Assembly (NCBI RefSeq): GCF_006345805.1
Contig: NC_043003.1
Location: 52,948,001-53,012,000, forward strand
Source: Octopus sinensis
Taxonomy: Eukaryota
DNA: 64,000 nt
Reading direction: 5' to 3'
The notes below the pieces were generated by a model. That model worked only from the letters and a program-made list of their open reading frames with translations, had not been told where the DNA came from and ran no database searches. A program made the translations under genes and the position numbers. Position 1 is the first letter of the stretch, and every line of letters begins with the position of its first letter. Positions 3,901-61,790 of the stretch are shown piece after piece.

Positions 3901-4263
3901 TCCAAAAGTCTAAGGTCACATTCGACGAGAGACCTGTGCCACGATAGTTAATAAACTGTACGTACTTACGTATATATGTATGTATGTATAAGAGAGCAAA
4001 GTGTACGTACGCCGCTATATATATATATATATATATACATAATACAAAATGGGACAAGAACGCAAAACATCCGGACAGCTAGGTGATACAAAAAGGAACA
4101 ACAAAACATCCAGATAGACAATGCAAAACACACAAGGACGGGTCATTCGAAGCCCTCTATCCTCAGTCAAGCACCATATTATCGTCGCAATTTCGGCTAT
4201 GTATGTATGTATGTTTGTATGTGTGTATGTATGTATGTATGTATGTATGTATGTATGTATGTA

Positions 4264-25496: not shown

Positions 25497-26041
25497 GCAT
25501 ATATGTATGTATGCATATATACCTGTATGTATGTTTATATATATGTATATATATATGTATGTGTGTATGTATGTATGTATGTATGTATGTATGTATGTAT
25601 AAATTTACATAATAAGGGTAAAAATTGATATTAATTAAATTAATATCAATTAAAACTAGTGGCCTAGCATATTGACAAAATCTGAAGATTCAGAAAATTA
25701 TATTACACACATATAAGAGGATTGACCACTAGGTGGATTCCGGCTTCGGTGCGCCAGAACGAAAACATTTGAAATATAACCCCAAATATATTTGATAGAA
25801 CTGTATGCATGTTCTCTCTCGAAAGGAGGTCTCGAATTATATTTTCCATGACGGTCACACTGAGGATTTGCAGACATTTACGTAATGTAAATGGTAACAA
25901 TGAAACCTAGGTATGTGACTAATCACTATATTTTGTATCTTTCCATTTGTCTTGCTCGCTTTACGTTCTGGTGCTTGCCAAATTTTCTTGAGAACAATTT
26001 TTCTTAGTGGTCAGACTATATGGGGTATATATAATATATAT

Positions 26042-26073
<32 letters not shown>

Positions 26074-26207
26074 GTATGTATACACACACACACACACGTA
26101 TATATATATGTATACACACTTATGTATGTATACATATATATGGTGTATGTATGTATATATATATATGTATATATATGTATATATATATGTGTGTATATAT
26201 ATGTATG

Positions 26208-26241
<34 letters not shown>

Positions 26242-26283
26242 ACAAATACATATATATTATAATATACATACATATACACACAC

Positions 26284-26337
<54 letters not shown>

Positions 26338-26359
26338 CATTTATATGTATTATATTCAG

Positions 26360-26705
26360 GAGTTCATTCCCACTGCGTAGCACCTGGGTAAGTGTCTTCT
26401 ACTATAGCCTCGGGCCGACCAAAGCCTTGTGAGTGGATTTAGTAGACGGAAACTGAAAGAAGCCTGTCGTATATATGTATAAATATATATGTATGTGTGT
26501 GTATATGTTTGTGTGTCTGTGTTTGTCTCCCCAACATCACTTCACAACCGATGGTGGTGTGTTTACGTCCCCGTAACTTAGCAGTTCGGCAAAAGAGACC
26601 GATAGAATAAGAACTAGGCTTCCAAAGTCCTGGGGTCGATCTGCTCGACTAAAGATGGTGCTCCAGCATGGCCGCAGTCAAATGACTGAAACAAGTAAAA
26701 GAGTA
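26360..26705 (+). mobile_element. SINE family 2, 5'-truncated
   Basis: Core, internal microsatellite and tail are intact. Confidence 0.88.
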
Positions 26706-30841: not shown

Positions 30842-31369
30842 ATATATACAATACATGACAAGGTATAATAATGGTCATTACATATTTTCCTTTACTGCTG
30901 TAAAATTGACTTACGGCTGTTTCTAGTATTCATTATAGGTTCATTATTGACAGATTCATTCAAACAGTCCATTGATAGGTAGAGAAAAATTGAATGACTC
31001 CGATGAAAGTAGCATTCATTTTTTTAAACCGTACAATTCTTGTCAACAGATGAAGGGACCGATTAAAGAAACCTATAAATAACGAACCTATAATGGCTAC
31101 TGGAAACAGGTGTAAGTAAAATTTACTGCAATGAAGGAAAGAAATGTAATGACTGTTATTTATACCTTGTCTCGTATATCACTCCGAGTGATATAACTGG
31201 ACTCGAACCACAGATTTACAATATAGAAAGGTGATGTATAATCTCGGACCCGGCTCCAAGAATACGCGGAGTTCTTCACTAATCTAAATATTGTTAGCCT
31301 GGTGTACTAACAGAAACTTATGATGAAGTATTTTGCTCGGAGTGATAACCCATTACTAATAACTATATA

Positions 31370-31382
31370 TATATTATATATG

Positions 31383-31455
<73 letters not shown>

Positions 31456-31460
31456 GTATG

Positions 31461-31492
<32 letters not shown>

Positions 31493-31869
31493 TATAATAT
31501 ATTAATATATATAATATTATATATATATGTATATATATATATATATCTATATATATATTATATATATATATGTATGTATGTATATATATGTATATACATA
31601 TGTATATTCATGTATGTATATATATATATGTGTGTATATATATATATGTATATATATGTATGTATATATATATATGTATATATATATATGTATGTATATA
31701 TATATATATATATATCTATATATATATATGTATGTATATATATGTATATATATATGTATATATGTATGTATATATATGTATATATATATATATATGTATA
31801 TATATGTATGTATATATATATATATATGCACATATATATATATTATATATATATATGCATATATATATG

Positions 31870-31933
<64 letters not shown>

Positions 31934-31960
31934 TGTATTATGTATGTATGTGTATGTATG
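31370..31960. repeat. Long imperfect (TA)n/(TATG)n tract
   Basis: Read directly. Similar tracts lie at 26020-26330, 25440-25600 and 13525-13690. Confidence 0.95.
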
Positions 31961-32909
31961 CATGTATGATTATCGTGCTGAAATGGTATTTGCCACAGAC
32001 ATGTTGGCGATGCTCTTCTCTTTTTCCATTCCCTGCTGTGTTTGTACTTAAGTTTAAACAGTGTATTATTATATATATATTATATATATATATATATATG
32101 ATTTGTATATACACGCACATACAGGTTCAATTTCTATACCATCTCCGCCTAGCAAATTTCAGTCACAACGTACTACTCAAACGGGAGCTATACTAGAAGA
32201 CACTTGCCCAATCCACTGCGAAGGTTAAGTCTAATAGAACCAGAAACTATATGATTGATAAGCGAACTTCTTAATTAAAGATCCATGTCTCTGTGAGTAA
32301 GGTATGGCTGTATCTTTCGTTGATTGCATATCAGCAAAGTATATAAAGGTCAATGAATGATATAAATACATAAACGAAAGAATGGAAACTTGTACCTTTA
32401 CGAACGAAGTGGCAATAGTTGTTCGCCACTGAGTAATAGACATTCTCTAGTCACCCACACTACGAAGAATGCATCGAATCTGTTACTGACCTGTAGAAAT
32501 CTGAAAACAATGATGTTACATATAATATAATATATAATATATAATACATAAACACACACACACACACTTTGATATTTTTACTTGATTCAATCATTAGACT
32601 GCGGTCATGGTGGGACACCATCTTGATCAGTTTTGTCGAAAAAAGTCGCCCCTCCCAGTACTTATGTTAGCGGTCTCTTTTACCAAACGAGGACGTAAAC
32701 AAACCAACACTAGTTGTCAAGCGGTGAGAGAGACATACACAAATGCAAACACAAAGACACCCACGCATATATATATATATGTGTAAAAAGTAAAAAATAT
32801 ATACAAACTGGGACAAGAACGTGAAACACCTAGAAGACGACACAAGAACCACAGGACGGGACATTCGAAGCCCTCAGTCATCAGTCAAGAACCGGATCAT
32901 CTTCGCATA

Positions 32910-32949
<40 letters not shown>

Positions 32950-35247: not shown

Positions 35248-35725
35248 ATGTCTCGATCATTCCTTGTTGATTCCTTAATTTTGAAGAAACCGAAAGTAAA
35301 TGAAAATGGTGGTAATAGTCCAGCAGGAAATACACACCCCAGTCACCAGAGCCCCTCTATTCACGGTCGTGGGTCGCCATCATCTATTTGTCCATCGAGG
35401 TTGTCCTCGACAACTCAGCCACTAACGTGTTACCCGCGACATCCATCTGATGTATTGGGATTCTGCTGTCCTCTCTGCATTCACACACCTCATCATTCTG
35501 TCGGTCAAGTGCTTGCAGGTCATACAACGGGTCTGGCAAGTGTCAAACCCTTGGGGGACATAGTAACTACAAGTTCGTCCTTGGTCGGAACTATACCAAC
35601 CACCCTCCCATCACATCACAGACAGATAGACATGCTATCGAACCAGTTACCCCATTTCCAACAAACCTCCAGTTTGCCAACTTACAGACCTACAGAACCA
35701 AGGCCAATCGGTTACATGAATTTAG
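35248..35725 (+). CDS. Gsx: Gsx (GS homeobox / ind, ParaHox) coding exon 1
   Basis: ATG at 35248 in a CAAAATG context. It encodes MSRSFLVDSLILKK, matching the N-terminus of vertebrate GSX1/GSX2 (MPRSFLVDSL / MSRSFYVDSLI), and FCCPLCI, the Gsx CPLC motif. The exon ends ATG AAT TTA G|GTGAGT, a canonical phase-1 donor at 35726. Confidence 0.93.
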
Positions 35726-35865
35726 GTGAGTATTAATATTATTTATGTATTCTTTCTGCCAGTCAGTTCATACCGCTTTTATGCCCTTCATAAAGTCAGT
35801 CTACTAGCAGCTAAGTCAGTGAGTATTACGACCATTCAAATATCTCTCTTAGTATGTACATGTGT

Positions 35866-35911
<46 letters not shown>

Positions 35912-35924
35912 GAGAGAGAGAGAG

Positions 35925-35957
<33 letters not shown>

Positions 35958-36125
35958 CATACATCCATACATACTACATACATACATATATATAGACATA
36001 CATATATATATATACACATATACATATATTATACAAGTGAGTAGACAAACGAAAGAAGGGCATTCAACACATTATTTGTTTACATGTAATATCAAGACAG
36101 TTTGATTCAAAATCAAACTGTTTTG

Positions 36126-36263
<138 letters not shown>

Positions 36264-36728
36264 AGGCGTTATACACTATCTAACATCCGTGTATATGTGA
36301 ATGCACGTATTCTCGTGCCCTCCCACGCGTATAATAGTTATATACACTTTTAACTCTGTCACTGCTACTATCATTATCAATAACTGCTCTGTCACACGAC
36401 CTACACTCAAACTAAACAACAATAACAGTCGCAACAACCATGATAGACACTTAACAGGAACAAAATTAATAACATTAATTTAATCAAAGTAGACTCAGTA
36501 TATGTCTAATCAGATATTCTTACTCCTTACATTTTTCCAGTAATGGTATGAATTTATTATATATTAATTTCAGTAATTGATTTAATCCTATAGATTCTAT
36601 AACTGAACACACACACGCACACACATGAATATATATTATGCAGCAATTAGTTTTAAGAGTCAACAGTCACTTCAATAGATTATACGTGTTGTAAAAATGT
36701 TTTACATCCTATCAAAACACACGGAAAC

Positions 36729-36774
<46 letters not shown>

Positions 36775-37370
36775 ACACACACACATAAATTTGCATACGT
36801 TCATATATTATGTTAAACATACTGAATAGGGATGCTTTTTTGCCTTCTAATTACGTATATAACTGTTTCTAATTTCTTATCCTAATTAATAGCAAATAAA
36901 TTATTAAACGCACTAATTTACATTCTATTGGCATATAATGAAGATGATGATGATGTTGATAGTAGTAGTAGCAGTAGATGTAGTAGTAGTAGTATTAATA
37001 ATAATAATGATAATAATAATAATAATTACATAATTATGATTTAAAATATCGTTATTACAATAGATTATTTCGTCTTCAACAATATATTGTAGTAACAATA
37101 TTTTAAATCATGGTTAGGTGTGATTGCAATTATATTATAGAATTATTAATTTCCATTCTATTCATATATACTAGCAAAATTATTATTGAAATATGAATTT
37201 ACATAATATTCTAATACAACAGTAAATATTTTTAAAAAATACTATTTTAAATTCAGATGGCAGATAATATTTTACATTGATGTATTCCATATACTTATCT
37301 ATATGAGCTTTGAATTCATGTACTCGCGCGAGTGTTAATGTGTGTGTATACATATATACATACATACATT

Positions 37371-37430
<60 letters not shown>

Positions 37431-38380
37431 GATATAGATACATGGATATATAGATATATTTATATATACATATGTACACACACACCGTAAATGTACACAC
37501 ACATATTGTAAATCAATAGCACCGATTGCAATGGAATTACTTTTGAAGTGAAACATATTAAGATGTTATTAAGATTAAATTGTATATGAAATTATTAAAA
37601 TTAATTTCTACATAACGCGTGTTGTCAGAATTTAGTAATATATAGGCATGTGTACCAAAGGAATAAAATGAGTGAAAAATCTATATAATACATACACACA
37701 TACATACGTAATACATACATACGTGCATACATATATAGACTTATATTGTCGACGAATGCTCGAAATGAGGAGTAGATAGACAGCCGACAACTGATGAAGG
37801 GTCCTTTCTCTGTGTTTACTTGTCCTGTTTTCCATTTTTTCTTGTTGTTTACGTATTTCATCACTTTAGGTGATGTCCTGTACCCATATATGCATGTATA
37901 TGCATGTATATATATACATATATATATGTATGTATGTATATATTACTTGATCTTCAAATAAATAATAAATAATAAACAATAATAATAATAATAATAATGA
38001 TAACATCAACAAAAAATTTGATACTTTAGCATAGAATAGTTATCTATTTAATATCAAAGTAATAACAATTTAAATAGCTGTAATCTATTTTTTTCAAATA
38101 ATTTTTTAAAATATAATTCTTAAACCAATGTAGTTTGAAGTTAATTAAAGTCAAGCAGTTTGCATTTATTTTCTTGGCTTAAAGTCAGCATCACCAGACT
38201 GTATGGAATGTAGAGGACTCAGTAATCAAGCTGAGATTAGGTACAATAGTTCATCTTTTGAACAATCTCTGTTTAATTCAGCTTGCATATAGTTTAAACA
38301 TGTATTGAATAATGTAAATATGTAATTAATAATTAATATATATATTTGTTTTTTTTTTTGTTTTTTGTTTTTTTCCATAG

Positions 38381-38449
38381 TTTTCGGTGAAATCCCTGCC
38401 AAGTCTAAGTATCTAGCGCCAGAAATCAGTGACAGTGAAGCCAGTCAAA
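38381..38449 (+). CDS. Gsx: Predicted Gsx internal coding exon 2 (69 nt, phase 1-1)
   Basis: A T-rich tract of about 30 nt ends in CATAG at 38380, and donor GTAAGT starts at 38450. The length is divisible by 3 and the exon is stop-free in the frame of exons 1 and 3: (V)FGEIPAKSKYLAPEISDSEASQ(S). No transcript evidence is available. Confidence 0.75.
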
Positions 38450-38820
38450 GTAAGTAGCAAAAAATTTATTTCAATACATTATTTTACACACACACACATT
38501 TATCCAATATTGTTTTAATACTTGTGGGAAAGGCTCGAGGGTAACAATTTCAACGAATATTTCCCTAAGAAACACAAATATAAACTGTATCTAGTTTATT
38601 AATTAATTAATACAAAGGAACCCACGTTCAGCTTCAATCTAGGATTTCGCTCTTTGGCATAGTTTATTTACCATACTGGATTCTTAACTTAAGTTCTTTC
38701 ATTGTCACAATAAAAACGATAAAAGCTAGACAATAATAAATGTTCACAAATTAATATTTCATTTTGTGTGTAATGTGCGTGCGTATGTGTATGTGTGTGT
38801 ATGTACGTATATATATATAT

Positions 38821-38871
<51 letters not shown>

Positions 38872-40917
38872 TATGATATGTAGAAAATTACAAACTGAGA
38901 CAAGAACGCATAAGAACTTAGAAGACGATACAACAAACACAGACAGGACATTCGAAGCCCTCAGTCTTCAGTCAAGAACCGGATCATCGTAGTAATTCGG
39001 CTGATATATATATATACACAAATACACACACACATATATACATATATATATACAGAGAGAGAAAGAGAGAGTTCTTAGTAAGGGATTACCATTCTGGGCA
39101 AAATACTTTATAATGACCAATCATTTATGCCTTGTGTTATATATACACACACATACATATATATGTATGTATGTATTTATGTATGTATGTATGTATGTAT
39201 GTATGTATGTATGTATGTATGTATGTATGTGTGTATGTATGTATGTATGTATTCCGTCTAGACATGAAAATGTGTTGTTAATATACATATATACTGATAT
39301 TGGCTAATTGACTAAATATTTATCAACTAGGGGCCCTTGTATAATAATACTTCTCAGTATTGTTGATGCTCTTTTATTTATTTTCCCTTATTCTATTTAT
39401 TTATTTATTTATTTATTTATTTATTTTGACCAACAACAATTATTCGACCCTTGACTGGTTGATTTTGTTTCTCTGCAGATATTCTTCGCTGACCATTGAA
39501 TTGCCTTTTAAATGTAATTGCATTCATAGTTATTTTACGGTCCGTTAGACTCACAGCAATAATGTATCCTTTCCACCTCCTTCTTTTTCCGCATCACTAG
39601 CTTACGAGTGTTTTCTCATTAATCTTCATTTACTCTTCATAAATCTCCCCTTAAAACGATGCAAATATTCCAAGAAGACATCTCTTCCTCCCTTTTCTTC
39701 TGTCAATTGAGAAGCTCAATTTATCTTTTCAGTTTTTTTCTTTCCTTTATTTTTTTTTGTTTCACCCTTACCTCCTTAAAACTTATTCTTTTTTCATCTT
39801 GTAACAATTTTTTTTTTAATCCTTTTCATCTTGTAACATTAAATTCCCCTTCAGTTTAGTCATTTCCTAATAGTAAACTTCTCACACAAACTACCTTTTC
39901 AACTCGGCTATCTTATGCTGCTTATCAATGTATTTAGCTTTTTCACTCTCACCACTTATAATCTTTAATAGCGGCCACTCAAGCTCCTTCAGTAACATAA
40001 GCTTCACTGCACACTATCACAGACAGGTTGTTATTGTTATCGTTGTCATCTGACAGTTATTGCGGAACTTCAGCCAGCTTGGGTATTGAGACGGAGTGCA
40101 AAGAGCGAACAAGAACGACAAGAGGGTAGTGGGAGATTAAATAGAAAGCGTGGTGGTAAGTGAGAGAAGATAAAGTAGATGTCGATTTATTTATTATGAG
40201 CGGAGAAGTTAAGTAGGTGGGGCTTGCGATAAATTTGCGATATGTAGATATGTAAACGCGTACTTACGCGCACTTTTTGTGTCTTATTCTACGCTTCTTT
40301 AAATGTTTTATGATACATGCATACATAGAATGAGGGTGCTACTAGTTTTTTTAACATGTATCCATCAACAATGTCTAAATGGGTTGATATTATTATAAAA
40401 GAGTGTGGAGTAGATTTAAACAAGGCGAAAAAGAATAGAACAAAAGCAAAAGAAATGCTAATCTATTTTTCATTATGATTATCAAATTATTGAGAACGGA
40501 AAAAAGAATTGTGCGTCTTTTTCTAGATGAATAAGCAAACAATAAACATACGAGTTTAAACAAAGAATAGGCAGAAAAAAGGCAACCTGAAATTTAGGAA
40601 GCGAACGAAGAGGGGATTAAGGATTTCTTTTTCTCGTTTGTATTCTAGTGTCATTGCGAGGGCCTCCCTTTCTTAATACGGTTTTTATTGAGTATACAAA
40701 ATGTTATCTCTCTTATATATTCTACAAGTCTTTATAATCCCATTAATGTTACACACACATTGTTGATATACACGCTAGATAATAAAATGGAAAGTGCGAA
40801 TATTGATTTAAAAATAAATGTGCTTTATCTGCGGATGGAAATTAATTCATAGAAATAAAATGAATTATTTCTTCATTTACTGAGCATAATTTGCTTGACT
40901 TTTAACAAGCAACATTC

Positions 40918-40996
<79 letters not shown>

Positions 40997-41481
40997 ACAC
41001 ATATGTATACAAACATATATATATATAATGTATTTGTGTATGTATATATAAACATAGATGTTGCGCATGTATATGAATGCGTATGTTTCAAAATATAACT
41101 TATTTAAATGCTTAAAATAATAGACTTGTTATTTTCGCAAAAAACCCTTAGTTTCTAGTTAAGGGTTTTCACACGTTATATTCTCTTTTCATCTGAATGA
41201 GTAATAATTATACTGTAGCATAAGTTCAGTCAATTATACCAACCAAAATATTTAATCATCATCGTATAGATGAGGAACTAAATAGTAAGAAAAATATGTC
41301 AGAACTCTATATGCAGTTACATGCAAAAATTATACACTGCTCTTAAAGCTTAAGTTTATTATAAAAAGTATTACAAAATTATATCGATTTATAGTGATGA
41401 TGTTTTCTTTCTGATATAATTTTTGTTTATAATCCAATATAAAACAGCATATTATATCTATATGTATTTTCTATTTTATAG

Positions 41482-41927
41482 GTAGCAAGTCTTCAGTGGA
41501 TGATCTGCAGAGTAGTAAGCGGATACGAACAGCATTTACTAGTAGGCAATTACTCGAACTTGAACGGGAATTCGCCGCTAATATGTATTTATCTAGACTA
41601 CGGCGTATTGAAATTGCTACATACTTAAATCTTTCTGAGAAACAAGTGAAGATCTGGTTTCAGAACAGACGTGTCAAATACAAAAAAGAAGGCACTGACG
41701 AATCACGAGAGAAATGTCGATGTCTGCGAACATGTACACCTCGAAACAGCTCCGAAAGGAAGAAGGCAAACGGTGATTTGATCGGTGAAAATAATGGCGA
41801 TATAGTTTGTAATAAAATTGCCAGAATAGACAATGGTTCCTCTGACGAAGGGGACTCTTATCACATCGAGATATCCGATGACATACACCACTGTGAATCA
41901 CCTTCAAGAAACTCTCCAAATACTTAA
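41482..41927 (+). CDS. Gsx: Gsx homeobox exon (last coding exon)
   Basis: Acceptor TTTTATAG ends at 41481 and phase 1 restores the frame. Homeodomain 41514-41693: [60 protein letters not shown], with the Gsx-diagnostic [19 protein letters not shown] CxC motif follows the homeodomain as in GSX2. TAA at 41925-41927. The predicted protein is 330 aa with exon 2 and 307 aa without. Confidence 0.96.
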
Positions 41928-55553: not shown

Positions 55554-58500
55554 TAGTTTTATTTTTTATAGCGTGCTTTCACTTCACTACCGAGCGCAGC
55601 TCTGTGTGCCTTGGGTATGTGCTGTGTGATTTGTTGTGATGCTCTGATGGTTATTGTATGGAAAGTGTTCTGCGTAGGATGTGTGCAGTGCCAGTAGTGC
55701 AATTTTCTGTATGTTATATGTGTTTGTAAGTCCTGGTGTTTTTGTTATGTATTTGTATGAATATTTTTTATCATGCCTAATGCACCTACTATGATAGGAA
55801 TTGTTTCTGTTTTTAGATTCCACATTCTGGTTACCTCTATTTCCAGTTCTTTGTATTTTGAGAGTTTCTCCATTTCTTTTAGAGACACGTTGTCATCTGC
55901 CAGTATTGATACATCAATTAGAAAGCATTTTTTTCCTTCATGATCTCTGACAACTATATCTGGTCTGTTGGCCTTAATTTCTCTATCTGTGTGTATCGGC
56001 ATATCCCAGAGTATGGTTGCTTTCTCATTTTCTGTGACCTTTTCTGGTGTGTGCCTATACCATCTTTTTTCTGTTGTTATTCCATAATGTTGGCATAGCT
56101 TCCGGTGTATGTAGGTCCCAACTCTGTCATGTCTGTGAATATATTCCTTCTTAGCCAGGACCGGGCAGCTAGAGATAACATGATTTATTGTTTCTTGTCC
56201 ATCTCCACATATTCTGCAGTTACTTGTTATATTTCTTTTCATTACATGTTTTTGGTAATTTCTGGTGGGGAGGCTTTGGTCTTGTGCTGCAATTAAAAAT
56301 CCCTCTGTCTCTGCTTTGAGTCCTGAGCTTCTCAACCATTGCTGGGATTTTTCTTTGTCTATTTCTTTTGCATTTAGTTTAGTCCAGTATTTACCGTGGA
56401 GGTGTTTTTCTTGCCATCGTTTTATCATGGTTCTTTGCTGTTCTAGTTTTAGTTTGGATTTCATTTGTTTTATAGCTTTTGTTGTTTCTTCTTCTTCTTC
56501 TTCTTCTTCTTCTTTTCTTCTTCTTCTTCTTCTTCTTCTTCTTCTTCTTCTTCTTCTCTCTTCTTCTTCTTCTTCTTCTTCTTCATATTTGTTAGGTGGT
56601 ATGATTTCTTGTTTGTATTTGTCAGCTTCCTTAAATACTGAGAACAGTTTTTTGTTTTGCTCGTGTTTTGCCGCTATTTGTATCAGTTTTCCTTCCTTCT
56701 GAAGTAGATATTCTTGCAGTCCTATGGTGGTTATTTTATAGTAGTTTTCCAGCTGTATAAGGCCTCTACCACTTCTATACGTTGTATATATAGTCTTTCT
56801 ATGTCAGATTTTGGGTGATGCATCCTAGACCCTGTCATTATTTTTCTTGTTTTCCTATCTATTTTGGTCAGTTCATTTAGTGTCCAGTTAAGAATATTGT
56901 AGCTGTAACTTATAACTGGGACGGCTAAAGTGTTAATACCAACGAGTTCAATAAGTAATGTCCCTGACCCACTTCCCATAGCAGTAGAGCAACGAAACTT
57001 GGCACAGTTATTAGTCTTTTTCTACATATGAACCACCCAGAGTTACGCATTTCTCCCATCGTTTGATGTAGCTCTGAAGACCGTTTTTGTAGAAGACCCC
57101 AGCTTGGTCCTCCAACCACGACGTGACTTCAGAAATCAAGGCTGCATCATCTGGGAAACGCTTTCCTTTCAAAAACAACTCATGGCTGGGAAGAGGTGAA
57201 AATCAGAGGGTGCAGGTCAGGAGAGTAGGGAGAATAGGGGATGAGTTCATAGCCGCACGCCTGTGCTTCTGATCTGGCGACACGCGAGTTGTGGATCGGA
57301 GCGTTGTCCTGCAGGAGGAAGATGCCTTTGCTGATCTTGCCCCGCCTCTTGATTTTGATAGCTTCTCTTAATTTCCTCAAAAGTGAAGCATAATAAACTC
57401 CTGTAATTGTGGCACCCTTTGCCAAGAAATCTGTCATCACTACTCCGTCCTGGTCCCAGAAGACTGTGAGCATGACCTTGCCAGCGGAGGGCTGCATCCT
57501 TGCCTTCTTTGGAGGAGGTGAGTCACGGTGCTTCCACTGCATTGACTGGGCTTTGGCCTCTGGATCATAGTGATGGACCCAGGTTTCATCCTGTGTAATC
57601 AGTCTTTTGAAAAATTTTGACTCATCTTCTTGGCACATCTTCAAATTCATCCTCGTGCAATCGATGCGTTCTTGCTTCTGGAAAGGTGTGAGCAGCCTGG
57701 GAATCCATCTGGCAGACACCTTTTGCATATGCAAATGGTCATGAATGATAGTTTCCACAGACCCGGTACTAATCTTGACCTCATGGGTTATTTGGCGAAT
57801 AGTTATGCGTCGATCTTCCAAAATGGCAGCCTCAACTTGACGGACAGATGCCTCATCAATGGCAGAAGGGGGCGACCAGATCTGGGAGCTGTTTCCACAA
57901 AGTTCCGACCATGTTTGAATTCACGATGCCAGCGTTTTACAAGGTCATATGATGGGGCATCATCACCATAAGTTACTTTTATTTCATCAAAAGTCTCCCG
58001 TTGTGTGCGTCCTTTCAAGTACAAAAAGCGGATCACTGCTCGACACTCAACAGGCTCCGTTTCACACTTGACTCAGTTCAAACACCTGTAAATCAGAAAC
58101 CACAATTAGTTCAGAGCTGTAATTTGCCACTTAATCTATAGAGATATAAATAATGGCACATGCAAAATTTCAGCTGCAAGTGGGTCAGAGGCATTACTTA
58201 TTGAACGCCCCTCGTATTATCTTGTTTTTAGCATTGAGCTCTGTTTTTTAGTATTGATCTGACTCGTCTATAATATTCTTTTTTTATTTTCTCTTTCATT
58301 TGTGTGTGTTGTATCTTATCTAGTTCATGGATTCCTAAGTATTTGTAAGTTTGGCTTTGGTCTAATTCTTTTATTTCATTGGTTTTATCTAGTGTGATGT
58401 TGCTACTCTTAACTAGTTTTCCTCTTTTCATGGTTACTTTGGCGCATTTTTCTAATCCAAATTTCATATCTATTTCTTTGGTAAATCCATGAAATGTCTT

Positions 58501-60880
58501 TAATAGTGTTTCCAGCTGTTTGTCATTTGCAGCGTATAGTTTTAGGTCATCCATATATAAAAGGTGGCTGATCGTTTTGCCGTAACATTTATATCCGCAT
58601 CCAGTTCTATTCAGCATTTCAGATAGAGGTGACAGTGCCAAGCAGAAAAGGAGTGGAGAGAGCGTGTCTCCCTGGAATATTCCTCTTCTAATGGGAATGG
58701 CTTTGGTTTTCATGAGTCCCTCTTTTGTTTGGAGCTGTAGCACTGTTTGCCATTTATTCATAGAGTGCCCAATGAATTTTATAATTGTTGGTGCTACTTT
58801 GTTAATGGCTAGTGTTTCGAGGATCCATGTGTGGGGGATGCTATCAAACGCCTTTTTGTAGTCAATCCAGGCCATACTGAGGCCTTTCTTCTTTCTGTAG
58901 CTGTCTTCAGTTATGGCTTTATTGATCATTAGTTGATCTTTACAGCCGTATGAGCCATTGCGGCATCCTTTCTGCTCTTCTGGAAACAGGTTGTTTTCGT
59001 CTAGGTGCTTGTTCAACCTTTGCGATATCACTGCAGTAAATGCCTTGCACATCGTAGGGAGACAGGTTTTTGGTCTGTAGTTTTCTGGTTTTGCTGTCTC
59101 ATTTGATTTGGGAATTAAGATGGTTTTCCCCTTCGTGAGCCATTCAGGCATTGTCTCTGGCTCTGCTAGTATGTTGTTAAAATTTTCAGCCAGCTTTTTG
59201 TGCATTCCTGTTAGATATTTCAACCAGAAGTTGGGGATCTTGTCATGCCCAGGTGCCTTCCAGTTGCTTAGTCTTTGCAGTGCCTGGGTGACCTCTTCAG
59301 TTGTTATGGGGGTCCAAAGTTGCTCAGATGCTGAGTTTGTTATTTCAATACTCCTTTTTTTTGGTTGTTCGTTCGCCGACCATATTTCTCTCCAGAATTC
59401 TTCCACTTCTTCTGCCGTTGGTGCTGCAGTGATTTCTATTTTATTTTTGCCAAGTTCTTGGTAGAACTTTTGGTGGTTGGAGTTGAACTTTTTGTTTTGT
59501 TCAAAGAAGCGCTGGCCTTTGTGCTTTGGCAAGGATATCTTGCTTTAGCTTTTCTTTTATCTCAGGTAAATCTTTTTGTGTGATGTATATGCGGAGTATT
59601 TTTGTTTTCTTTTTGTTGCTCAGTAGCGTTGATTGTCTACTGATTTCATTAAGAATCGACAGATCTTTTCTTATTTTTTGTATTTTGTTTTGGATGTTAT
59701 TTATCCACAGGGTTTGTTTGGGTGGTGGTACTCCTGTTTGGACGGGTTTGAGTGAGTATCCAGCTTCTTTTGTGGATGCAGTGGCTGCTGCGTATACTAA
59801 GTCATTTAGCTCAGTGATATCGCTTTTTGTTTCAGTGGCTATTAGTTCCGTGACGGCTAGGTTAATGCTGTTTATAATTGGTGTTGTTGTTTCGTCTATT
59901 TTGATTTTTTGGAGGTATGGTCGGTGGTCCATTTTGAGCTCTGTGGTTTTCAGTTCTTTGATTATTCTACTTTTTATATTATCATATTCATTAGGCTCCC
60001 ATTCATTGTTTCCAGGTTTTAGATTTGTGTCGTTTTCTTTCTTATTTGTATGTTTGTTTGTCGTGTTACATTTGTCTTCGTGTTTTACTGTTTCAGTGTT
60101 TATATTATTGGGCATTGTTGTCTGGCTTCTATCTACATTTTCTTGATGTATTTTTACTTTTAGATGTTCTATTTCTATTTCTGATATTTTTTTTGCGTTG
60201 AGAATATATCTCCGTATATTTGCTAGTTTGTTAGGGTTCAATGTTGTATCCAAGTCTATATTTATGTTGTTTTCCTTTCATATTTTATATGTATGTGTTG
60301 TTGTGTTTTCATTCTTTGGGTAGAGCACTGCTGTAAAATAAGCATGTAGGATAGAAATGTATTCCTCACGTGTCCATTTATGTCTTTTGGGTTTTATTTG
60401 CGGGACATGAGGGACAACGTCCGGCCCATTATTTTGACGGTCGTCATTTTCGTAGGGTACCGGTCCGTTCATTTCTGTTGTCACATTGTTTTGCACGTGT
60501 AGTTTTTCGTACATTTTATGTTGTAAGTTTAATGTACGTACTTCTCGATTGCTATTCTTGGGTTGAATAATATCGGTGTTATTTAATTTCTTCGTAGTTT
60601 TTTTGTACATGGTGTTTGGGGTCGGAGATGACGGGTCGTAATGTTCCGCACATGTTTACATGTGTTGTGTTCGAGGTGGAGATGATATCGAGTTAAAATA
60701 CATCATTTCGTTTCGAAAAAAGTAATAAATTTCAATGGGTATCACTTACTCAGATATAGTTCAATCCTTTGTCAAGAAATTTTTGGCTTCATACGATGTC
60801 TTTGTATTCGATGTTTGTGGATAGATTTCGGAGCGCTATTTTATCGCTCTCACATGTTTACGTCCCCGGTGTAATCTTGT
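55551..60880 (-). mobile_element. Near full-length R4/Dong-clade non-LTR retrotransposon (RT + CCHC finger + restriction-like endonuclease), disrupted
   Basis: N-terminal KWTREEY region. RT motifs KAPGHD, EQKGC..GCKDQL, IDYKKAFDSIPH, GIFQGDTLSPLLF, YMDDLKLY, FGLEKC and YKYLGI. C-terminal CRICGDGQETINHVISSC, RHD and RPDIV..IDVS..K..KY (RLE). No AP endonuclease. The 3' end ACTACTG runs into (AAT)n. Interrupted by stops, frameshifts, a mariner and a (GAA)n expansion. Confidence 0.9.
56943..58214 (-). mobile_element. Mariner (DD34D) transposon nested in the R4/Dong LINE; transposase pseudogene 57011-58060
   Basis: TIRs CGAG(GGGCG)TTCAATAAGTAATG..CTGACCCACTT at both ends, the left one lacking 5 nt. 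TA at 58215 and AA at 56941. Motifs WIPRLL, TQDETW, LQDNAPIH and YSPDL(A)PSD give 34-residue spacing after repairing a 1-nt deletion. Start codon mutated to ACG, with at least three frameshifts. Confidence 0.93.
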
Positions 60881-61352
60881 TCTTTTCTTCTTCTTCTTCT
60901 TCTTCTCTTCTTCTTTTCTTCTTCTTCTTCTTCTTCTTCTTCTTCTTCTTTCTTCTTCTTCTTCTTCTTCTTCTTCTTCTTCTTCTTCTTCTTCTTCTTT
61001 TTTTTTCTTCTTCTTCTTCGTCTTCTTCTTCTTCTTCTTCTTCTTCTTCTTCTTTTCTTCTTTCTTCTTCTTTTCTTTTCTTCTTCTTCTTCTTCTTCTT
61101 CTTCTTCTTCTTCTTCTTTTCTTCTTCTTCTTCTTCTTCTTCTTCTTCTTCTCTTCTTCTTTCTTCTTCTTCTTCTTCTTCTCTTCTTCTTCTTCTTCTT
61201 CTTTTCTTCTTCTTCTTCTTCTTCTTCTTTCTCTTCTTCTCTTCTTCTTCTTCTTCTTCTTCTTCTTCTTCTTCTTCTTCTTCTTCTTCTTCTTCTCTTC
61301 TTCTTCTTTTCTTCTTTTCTTCTTCTTCTTCTTCTTCTTATTATTATTATTA
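60881..61352. repeat. (TTC)n tract of about 460 bp followed by (TTA)n
   Basis: Pyrimidine-only on the + strand for about 458 nt, with TTTTC and TCTC slips. Confidence 0.97.
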
Positions 61353-61365
61353 TATTACATATTAT

Positions 61366-61790
61366 ATGTTTGACTTTTGTTTTATATTTGTACAAGTTGG
61401 CTCCAAGTCTCACCCGGAGACCTCAAGAGACAACAGGTTGGAAGTTCACGTTGTTGTTATGCCTAGTGTGCCATATATTTGGTTGTTTTTTGTGTTGTAC
61501 TGGTGGATGTCTTAAAAAAAACTGTTTGTTTTAAACCTTGAGATTACATAGAAAGTATTTTGCGTAGGATATGAGCAGTTCCCATGAACACTATCTTTTG
61601 AATTTCTGCCATTTTTGGGTTTCCTGGTATCTGAGTTAGGTAGCAATCAGCCCCTTTTGCTATCATTCCCAGGGCACCTATCACAACAGGTATTGTCTTA
61701 GTCATCAGGTTCCACATTTTGCTGATTTCTATTTCAAGATCTTTATATTTGCTCAGTTTTTGGTAGGTCTTGACAGATACGTTTATATCG

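What the first reader, a model, noticed from the sequence alone, without database searches (positions are those of the whole stretch)
38381..38449. Hidden third coding exon in Gsx
Seen: in the middle of the 5.75-kb gap between the obvious exons there is a very strong acceptor (T-run, CATAG, TTAAT branch-like motifs upstream) and a consensus GTAAGT donor. They enclose 69 stop-free nt in the right phase, adding 23 Ser/acidic-rich residues before the homeodomain. Established knowledge: vertebrate GSX1 and GSX2 have two exons. The exon 1 end here (..YMNL G|) aligns with the GSX2 ..HCLTM G region. Inference: this is a lineage-specific intron gain or exon gain. Because the exon is symmetric it could be skipped, giving 330-aa and 307-aa isoforms.
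Basis: partly seen in the sequence, partly recalled or inferred. Interest (0 to 1): 0.7.

Follow-up and report, generated by a model that had tools for sequence, protein, structure and literature searches.

The report
Octopus-specific small coding exon in Gsx
The 69-base segment has every sequence feature of an extra coding exon in the octopus Gsx homeobox gene and is absent from cuttlefish, squid and other animals, but public octopus gene annotations already include it, so it is a modest lineage-specific exon gain and not a hidden discovery.

Summary
The window is Octopus sinensis chromosome CM016865.1 and carries the ParaHox gene Gsx. Bases 38381-38449 are 69 nt, flanked by a T-rich tract plus CATAG and by GTAAGT. 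They are open only in the one frame that the phase-1 flanking exons require.

The exon is not hidden. The 330-aa three-exon product is identical to RefSeq XP_036360681.1. The same 23 residues occur in the O. bimaculoides and O. vulgaris gene models.

Across the three Octopus genomes the exon is 68/69 identical, the one change is synonymous, and both splice sites are kept. The runner-up candidate exon in the same intron has frame-breaking indels.

Sepia esculenta transcripts, Euprymna scolopes Gsx and more than 120 other Gsx proteins lack the insert. Haliotis and Sepia have a single phase-1 intron at this site. This points to an exon gained inside the ancestral intron, not an intron gain.

Caveats:
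- I could not reach any octopus RNA evidence.
- The three annotations are not independent of each other.
- Splice signals plus an open frame of this quality arise by chance about 0.27 times per intron of this size.
- Skipping (a 307-aa isoform) is untested.

The insert is predicted to be disordered and lies just before the homeodomain.

The parts
35248..35725 (+). Gsx coding exon 1 (aa 1-159 plus the first base of codon 160). It carries the N-terminal MSRSFLVDSLILKKP motif and ends in phase 1.
   Evidence: 100% match to XP_036360681.1. N-terminal motif invariant in alignment A1. PMC2723086 calls this motif the SNAG repressor domain of Gsx.
35312..35317 (+). Internal alternative donor G|GTAATA inside exon 1. 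The O. vulgaris 192-aa model uses it, joining ..KVTENG directly to the 69-nt exon.
   Evidence: P0122 alignment; sequence context. Whether this junction rests on transcripts or on ab initio prediction is unknown (annotation method).
35726..38380 (+). Intron A (2655 nt), the 5' part of the ancestral single phase-1 intron. Donor is GTGAGT.
   Evidence: The phase-1 intron at the same position in Haliotis and Sepia is shown.
38326..38337 (+). Two TTAAT (YTRAY-type) branch-point-like motifs, 44-51 nt upstream of the exon.
   Evidence: Conserved in all three Octopus species. Functional use is inferred.
38345..38380 (+). T-rich polypyrimidine tract plus CATAG acceptor. No other AG lies within 88 nt upstream.
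   Evidence: Best-scoring acceptor of 267 in the intron. The tract is shorter but retained in O. vulgaris and O. bimaculoides.
38381..38449 (+). 69-nt symmetric (phase 1 to phase 1) coding exon. Inclusion replaces Gly160 of the skipped form with VFGEIPAKSKYLAPEISDSEASQS (net +23 aa, aa 160-182 plus the changed junction codon).
   Evidence: Contained in the RefSeq, UniProt and ENA models of three Octopus species. 68/69 nt identical with one synonymous change. Absent from all other Gsx proteins.
38450..38455 (+). Consensus donor GTAAGT of the 69-nt exon.
   Evidence: 4th best of 291 GT sites in the intron. Invariant in three species.
38450..41481 (+). Intron B (3032 nt), the 3' part of the ancestral intron. 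It holds a CA microsatellite just after the donor and a dispersed repeat at 38857-39114.
41482..41927 (+). Gsx homeodomain exon (CDS, with stop TAA at 41925-41927). The homeodomain is aa 195-251, at 41517-41687.
   Evidence: Pfam PF00046, E=1.9e-21, residues 195-251. ORF end coordinate.

Best explanation
The 69-nt segment is a genuine small coding exon of Octopus Gsx. It arose by exonization of sequence inside the single ancestral phase-1 intron, which lies 12-13 codons upstream of the homeodomain. The gain happened after octopods and decapodiforms split; it is shown here only for the genus Octopus.

Shown:
- The exon, its splice signals and its reading frame are present and conserved in O. 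sinensis, O. vulgaris and O. bimaculoides.
- It is part of the public gene models of all three species.
- All other Gsx proteins retrieved lack it and keep a spacer of about 12 aa between the intron site and the homeodomain.
- AlphaFold2 predicts the inserted residues as low-confidence coil.

Inferred:
- Inclusion lengthens the flexible linker between the conserved pre-homeodomain motif (..PRPIGYMNL) and the N-terminal arm of the homeodomain from 12 to 35 residues.
- It adds a Ser/acidic cluster (ISDSEAS) that matches the casein-kinase-2 S-x-x-D/E pattern. This would tune DNA binding or partner binding without changing the homeodomain or the N-terminal repressor motif.
- Because the exon is symmetric, skipping would restore the ancestral 307-aa form. 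I consider regulated inclusion plausible (about even odds), but it is untested.
For: - Identity of the locus: Gsx on O. sinensis CM016865.1, and the 330-aa product equals XP_036360681.1.
- The same 23 aa occur in O. bimaculoides XP_014769873.1 and O. vulgaris CAI9725764.1.
- DNA conservation: 68/69 identical in both species, the only change is TAT to TAC (Tyr), and AG and GTAAGT are invariant. Aligned intron identity to O. bimaculoides is 0.81-0.875, and only 1.5% of 69-nt intron windows are as conserved.
- Best splice-site pair of 238 in-frame candidates in the intron.
- The runner-up at 40057-40155 carries many substitutions and a net 4-nt insertion that breaks the frame in O. bimaculoides.
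- Exon GC is 45% against 29% for the intron.
- Sepia esculenta larval RNA-seq contigs (indexed in 47 blocks of the collection, 24 contigs read) join exon 1 directly to the homeodomain exon in phase 1. Haliotis asinina has two exons with a phase-1 intron at the same place.
- The spacer before the homeodomain is about 12-13 aa in more than 120 Gsx proteins, and only Octopus has +23.
- AF2: only the homeodomain helices fold, and residues 160-182 have pLDDT of about 45-52.
- No homologue of the peptide among 1.84 billion representative proteins, which fits de novo origin from intron sequence.
Against: - No octopus transcript, EST or RNA-seq junction could be examined. The protein collection holds no octopus Gsx ORF from RNA-seq assemblies; its cluster has only the three genome-derived models.
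- The three annotations are not independent. The O. vulgaris pipeline aligned the O. bimaculoides proteome. From general knowledge, NCBI's Gnomon also uses cross-species protein alignments. One early prediction could therefore have propagated.
- Splice signals plus an open frame of this quality occur by chance about 0.27 times per intron of this length.
- Conservation is not confined to the exon. The 130 nt upstream are nearly as conserved, and several other intron windows reach 96-97% identity. With one substitution there is no power to separate coding from non-coding constraint.
- The functional statements (linker length, CK2-type sites) are inference only.
Confidence: 0.75

Rival explanations
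1. Annotation artefact. The segment is a conserved intronic non-coding element (for example part of a Gsx regulatory block) that happens to carry splice-like signals and one open frame. An ab initio prediction placed it in the O. bimaculoides model, and later pipelines copied it through protein alignment. On this view real Gsx mRNA in Octopus is two-exon, as everywhere else.
For: - About 0.27 equally good candidates are expected by chance per intron.
- Conservation extends about 130 nt upstream and is matched by other intron blocks.
- The O. vulgaris annotation used the O. bimaculoides proteome.
- The O. vulgaris model has an odd exon 1 truncation, which shows the models at this locus are not all reliable.
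- The spacer before the homeodomain has a conserved length across Bilateria.
- No RNA evidence was seen here.
Against: - The best acceptor in the intron and a near-best donor sit 69 nt apart, and the only open frame is the required one.
- The exon is the most conserved part of its block (1.4% divergence against 6-8% in the flanks), and its only change is synonymous.
- There is a local GC peak.
- The runner-up candidate decays in frame while this one does not.
- From general knowledge, gene predictors rarely insert a 69-nt exon without evidence.
Confidence: 0.17
2. The exon is real but marginal. It is a recently exonized, weakly included cryptic exon, or it belongs mainly to a minor isoform such as the 192-aa O. 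vulgaris form. The dominant, functional Gsx protein would be the ancestral 307-aa form, and the insert would have no selected function.
For: - From established knowledge of exonization, newly gained symmetric exons are usually alternatively spliced with low inclusion.
- The spacer length is conserved across Gsx.
- The insert is predicted to be disordered and has no homologues.
Against: - Both RefSeq names carry no isoform label and the models include the exon. The exact 307-aa O. sinensis sequence is not in the collection.
- The peptide is 23/23 identical across three species, with strong consensus splice sites.
Confidence: 0.06
3. Intron gain. The 23 residues are ancestral coding sequence, and a new intron split a longer exon in Octopus.
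Against: - No orthologue (cuttlefish, bobtail squid, bivalves, gastropods, annelid, priapulid, arthropods, vertebrates) has residues aligned to the insert.
- The outer boundaries coincide in position and phase with the single intron of Haliotis and Sepia.
Confidence: 0.02

Closest known systems
Canonical two-exon Gsx / GSX1, GSX2 / ind (ParaHox, ANTP class)
   Same: - N-terminal MSRSFxVDSL motif and a Gsx-type homeodomain.
- A Cys-rich CCPLC motif and a post-homeodomain CRCLRTC motif.
- A phase-1 intron 12-13 codons before the homeodomain.
   Different: Octopus models carry one extra 69-nt exon in that intron. It lengthens the spacer before the homeodomain from 12 to 35 residues, and no other Gsx retrieved does this.
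Ubx linker microexons mI/mII of Drosophila (own knowledge, not tested here)
   Same: Small symmetric cassette exons that encode a disordered linker immediately N-terminal to a homeodomain. Inclusion changes the distance between an upstream short motif and the homeodomain.
   Different: - Ubx microexons are experimentally shown to be alternatively spliced, and they act on the YPWM-Exd interaction.
- Gsx has no hexapeptide; PMC2723086 lists one for Xlox and Cdx only.
- Alternative use of the octopus exon is unproven.
Lineage-specific exonization of intronic sequence, such as Alu-type exonization in primates (own knowledge)
   Same: A new symmetric exon appears inside an old intron. A long T-run provides the polypyrimidine tract. 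The peptide has no homologues, and the insertion falls in a disordered region.
   Different: No transposable-element copy of the exon region was found in the 64-kb window. The T-run is not demonstrably an antisense poly(A) tail.
Srrm3/4 (eMIC)-dependent neural microexons (own knowledge)
   Same: A short exon in a neural developmental gene, flanked by conserved intron sequence.
   Different: At 69 nt it is longer than the usual 3-27 (up to 51) nt class. No UGC motif lies between the branch region and the AG; there is no TGC in the 88 nt upstream.

Membership tests
Gsx (ParaHox homeobox gene) | Homeodomain of the Gsx type | tested here: met
   Pfam PF00046, E=1.9e-21 at residues 195-251. The listed named hits are almost all GS homeobox/Gsx proteins, and the homeodomain is nearly invariant with them.
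Gsx (ParaHox homeobox gene) | N-terminal MSRSFxVDSL (SNAG-type) motif | tested here: met
   Residues 1-10 are invariant in alignment A1. The motif is named in PMC2723086.
Gsx (ParaHox homeobox gene) | Two coding exons separated by one phase-1 intron just upstream of the homeodomain | tested here: not met
   The outer boundaries match the phase-1 intron of Haliotis and Sepia, but the Octopus models have three coding exons. This departs in gene structure, not in orthology.
Alternatively spliced cassette exon | Transcripts both with and without the exon | not testable with these tools
   No octopus RNA data were reachable. Only inclusion models exist, and the exact 307-aa O. sinensis sequence is not in the collection.
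Alternatively spliced cassette exon | Length divisible by three and conserved flanking intron sequence | tested here: met
   The exon is 69 nt, phase 1 to phase 1. The upstream 130 nt and downstream 45 nt are conserved in three species.
Transposable-element-derived exonization | Exon and/or splice sites lie within a recognisable repeat copy | tested here: inconclusive
   Self-BLAST of the exon +/-300 nt against the 64-kb window gives only T-run matches. No genome-wide repeat library was available.
eMIC/Srrm4-type neural microexon | Length of 51 nt or less, with a UGC motif close to the 3' splice site | tested here: not met
   The exon is 69 nt, and there is no TGC in the 88 nt upstream of the AG.

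The most novel reading that the evidence does not exclude
The exon is an octopod innovation that is developmentally regulated. Gsx-expressing neurogenic tissue (the lateral lips) and gut would switch between the ancestral 307-aa protein and a 330-aa form. In the longer form a phosphorylatable linker changes how the conserved pre-homeodomain motif and the homeodomain cooperate. That would be a rare case of protein-coding novelty in a deeply conserved ParaHox transcription factor, tied to cephalopod nervous-system evolution. The 192-aa O. vulgaris form (N-terminal repressor motif + new exon + homeodomain) could be a third, truncated isoform.
Probability: 0.15. Interest if true: 0.5.

Novelty: already known. 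Interest (0 to 1): 0.25.

Why it matters
Gsx is one of the three ParaHox genes, and its two-exon structure and short spacer before the homeodomain are conserved across Bilateria. A coding exon gained in the octopus lineage next to the homeodomain would be a small but concrete example of protein-level change in a core patterning and neurogenic factor. It can be tested directly with existing primers and public RNA data.

For the scan itself the lesson is practical. The exon is already in RefSeq, UniProt and ENA models, so this is not a new gene feature. What appears undescribed in the papers I could search is the comparative point that the exon is restricted to Octopus among the Gsx genes sampled.

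Tried and rejected
- Short-peptide search of the 5.8-billion-protein index with a 71-aa junction peptide returned 'no candidate'. This is a false negative of the word index, because P0001 contains the query.
- phmmer of a 46-aa junction peptide against 1.84 billion representatives gave one hit, P0131. It is a 622-aa tandem-repeat protein whose score accumulates over repeats, so it is not a homologue.
- Search for an orthologous exon in 4.3 kb of Sepia intron (L004) gave only chance-level tblastn hits with stops and no splice sites. The contig does not cover the whole intron.
- TE origin: no repeat copies in the window.
- dsRNA or editing-complement structure that might explain the flank conservation: the RNA fold of 38230-38500 has z=+0.65. 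Rejected.
- Second candidate exon at 40057-40155 (strong GGTAAGT donor, GC-rich): not conserved in frame. Rejected.
- An apparent Octopus-Sepia match of intron block 40799-40872 turned out to be AT-rich low complexity.
- The O. vulgaris Gsx paper (PMC10509229) and its supplement give primers that span the exon, but no sequence or amplicon size.
- Scallop locus look-up failed because the protein is not on record. Haliotis was used instead.
- Rfam and tRNA scans of the window found nothing.

Full report
**Locus.** The window is part of Octopus sinensis chromosome CM016865.1 (assembly GCA_006345805.1). Locus L001, fetched with the encoded protein, is identical to window 25248 onward. The only cellular gene I could recognise is the ParaHox gene Gsx, on the + strand.
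- Exon 1 runs 35248-35725 (ATG at 35248) and ends in phase 1 before GTGAGT.
- The homeodomain exon runs 41482-41927, with the stop at 41925-41927.
- Pfam finds one homeodomain at residues 195-251.
- The best database hits are GS homeobox/Gsx proteins.

**The observation.**
- Upstream there are two TTAAT motifs (38326-38330, 38333-38337), a T-rich tract (38345-38376) and CATAG.
- The exon is 69 nt (38381-38449), followed by GTAAGT.
- Only one of the three frames of the 69 nt is open, and it is the frame required by the phase-1 ends of the flanking exons.
- Inclusion gives a 330-aa protein and skipping gives 307 aa.
- The segment is 45% GC in a 29% GC intron, and the nearest upstream AG is 88 nt away.

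**Is it more than chance?**
- I used a rough consensus scoring, with frequencies taken from general knowledge and not trained on octopus. By that score the acceptor is the best of 267 AGs in the intron, the donor is 4th of 291 GTs, and the pair ranks first of 238 stop-free, in-phase, symmetric candidates.
- The same scan over both strands of the full window finds six equally good phase-1 candidates in 128 kb. That is about 0.27 per 5.76-kb intron. Sequence signals alone are suggestive, not significant.
- Comparison with O. vulgaris (L003) and O. bimaculoides (L002) adds weight. The exon is 68/69 identical in both, and the one difference is TAT/TAC (Tyr, synonymous). AG and GTAAGT are invariant, and the pyrimidine tract is retained although shorter.
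- Aligned intron identity to O. bimaculoides is 0.81-0.875. Only 1.5% of 69-nt intron windows are as conserved as the exon.
- The runner-up candidate at 40057-40155 has many substitutions and a net 4-nt insertion in O. bimaculoides, which breaks its frame.
- A caveat applies. The species are close (exons 1 and 3 are 96.4-96.9% identical), the 130 nt upstream of the exon are nearly as conserved, and other intron blocks reach 96-97%. One substitution cannot separate coding from non-coding constraint.

**It is not hidden.** The 330-aa product is exactly RefSeq XP_036360681.1, 'GS homeobox 1-like [Octopus sinensis]'.
- The 90%-identity cluster also holds O. bimaculoides XP_014769873.1 (= UniProt A0A0L8HTG2, 330 aa) and O. 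vulgaris CAI9725764.1 (192 aa). Both carry the identical 23 residues VFGEIPAKSKYLAPEISDSEASQ.
- The exact 307-aa O. sinensis skipping product is not in the collection.
- These annotations are not independent. The O. vulgaris pipeline combined Iso-Seq and RNA-seq, ab initio predictors and Spaln alignment of the O. bimaculoides proteome (PMC10700109). From general knowledge, NCBI's Gnomon also uses cross-species proteins.
- No octopus Gsx ORF derived from RNA-seq assemblies exists in the collection. The cluster has only these three genome-derived members. I therefore saw no direct RNA evidence.

**Lineage specificity.**
- Euprymna scolopes Gsx (Q49QY0) and a cuttlefish Gsx (P0002/P0123) lack the insert.
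- P0123 is indexed in 47 blocks of the Logan collection, and 24 contigs were read. Three of the run accessions shown appear in Sepia esculenta larval transcriptome papers.
- In the Sepia transcript, exon 1 joins the homeodomain exon directly in phase 1 (..AGC TTA G|GG AGA..), and the Sepia genomic contig has GTGAGT at that point.
- Haliotis asinina Gsx has two coding exons and a 2061-nt phase-1 intron at the homologous position.
- In more than 120 Gsx proteins from molluscs, annelids, priapulids, arthropods, hemichordates and vertebrates, the stretch between the intron site and KR[IM]RTAFT is about 12-13 residues. Only the Octopus models have +23.
- The outer boundaries are those of the ancestral intron, and the 23 residues have no counterpart anywhere. 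This is therefore exon gain inside an old intron, not intron gain.
- The gain is shown only for the genus Octopus. Deeper octopods could not be sampled.

**Origin.**
- No repeat copy of the exon region occurs in the window.
- No homologous exon was found in the 4.3 kb of Sepia intron available.
- An exhaustive phmmer search of a 46-aa junction peptide found only a spurious tandem-repeat protein.
- The data fit de novo exonization of unique intronic sequence. TE origin remains open without a genome-wide repeat library.

**How it probably works (inference).**
- AlphaFold2, run on a 54-sequence alignment, folds only the three homeodomain helices. Residues 160-182 are low-confidence coil.
- The exon therefore inserts a flexible segment between the conserved ..PRPIGYMNL motif at the end of exon 1 and the N-terminal arm of the homeodomain, tripling that spacer.
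- It also adds ISDSEAS, which fits the S-x-x-D/E pattern of casein kinase 2 (own knowledge).
- I consider modulation of DNA or partner binding through linker length and phosphorylation the most likely role. The closest analogy is the Ubx linker microexons (own knowledge). Gsx has no hexapeptide, so it is not a member of that mechanism.
- Regulated skipping is plausible. The exon is symmetric, its flanks are conserved, and the ancestral spacer length is conserved. It remains untested.

**Verdict.** I put the probability that this is a truly spliced coding exon at about 0.75. The main rival, at about 0.17, is a propagated annotation artefact on a conserved intronic element. Because the exon is already in public gene models, novelty is low. 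The comparative point is a modest addition.

Noticed in passing
window 35311|35312 (inside exon 1); L003 gene 10001-16581: The O. vulgaris model CAI9725764.1 (192 aa) splices from an internal donor G|GTAATA after codon 21 (..KVTENG) straight to the 69-nt exon. It skips 138 codons of exon 1 but keeps the N-terminal repressor motif, the new exon and the homeodomain. This could be a real short isoform or an annotation artefact.
   Followed up: partly
window 40000-40260 (candidate 40057-40155): A GC-rich island (about 46% GC) in intron B has a very strong GGTAAGT donor at 40156 and a 99-nt in-phase open frame. It is the runner-up exon candidate, but O. bimaculoides has many substitutions and a net 4-nt insertion that breaks the frame.
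   Followed up: yes
window 37722-37862, 38244-38380, 39427-39552, 39930-40050, 40755-40915: Several intron blocks are 96-99% identical between O. sinensis and O. bimaculoides, as conserved as the coding exons. They are candidate conserved non-coding elements of the Gsx locus.
   Followed up: no
window 38484-38498; L003 and L002 just downstream of the exon: A CA microsatellite begins about 35 nt after the exon's donor. It is short in O. sinensis, greatly expanded in O. vulgaris, and ends in an assembly gap (run of N) in O. bimaculoides.
   Followed up: partly
window 38857-39114, with copies at 32767-32939, 31320-31431 and 4116-4211: A dispersed repeat family (77-79% identity) has one copy in intron B and three elsewhere in the window. 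It is probably a short interspersed element and was not classified.
   Followed up: no
window 55745-60253, - strand: Retrotransposon remains: an ORF with a reverse-transcriptase domain (58228-59532, RVT_1 E=3.6e-31) and a zf-RVT ORF (55745-56464). A mariner-type transposase fragment (57180-57821, Transposase_1 E=5.4e-25) lies between them, suggesting nested insertion.
   Followed up: partly
window 26000-26400, 31400-32200, 60770-61500 and others: Long TA/CA-type microsatellites and Ser/Leu/Phe or Arg/Lys/Glu homopolymer-like tracts generate many spurious long ORFs (the 'YIYIYI' type).
   Followed up: no
L005-L010 (Sepia esculenta transcripts), P0124/P0130: Some cuttlefish Gsx contigs give a 316-aa ORF that starts at an upstream in-frame ATG (MAISTVNTAIFK-MSRSF..), 12 codons before the conserved start. 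The Sepia WGS contig L004 (ERR3431203) is only 96.5% identical to the S. esculenta transcript, so it comes from another Sepia species or a divergent haplotype.
   Followed up: no
tool behaviour: the search for homologous proteins returned no candidates for a 71-aa query that is a perfect substring of P0001, P0121 and (in part) P0122. Short queries can therefore give false negatives with the word index.
   Followed up: partly
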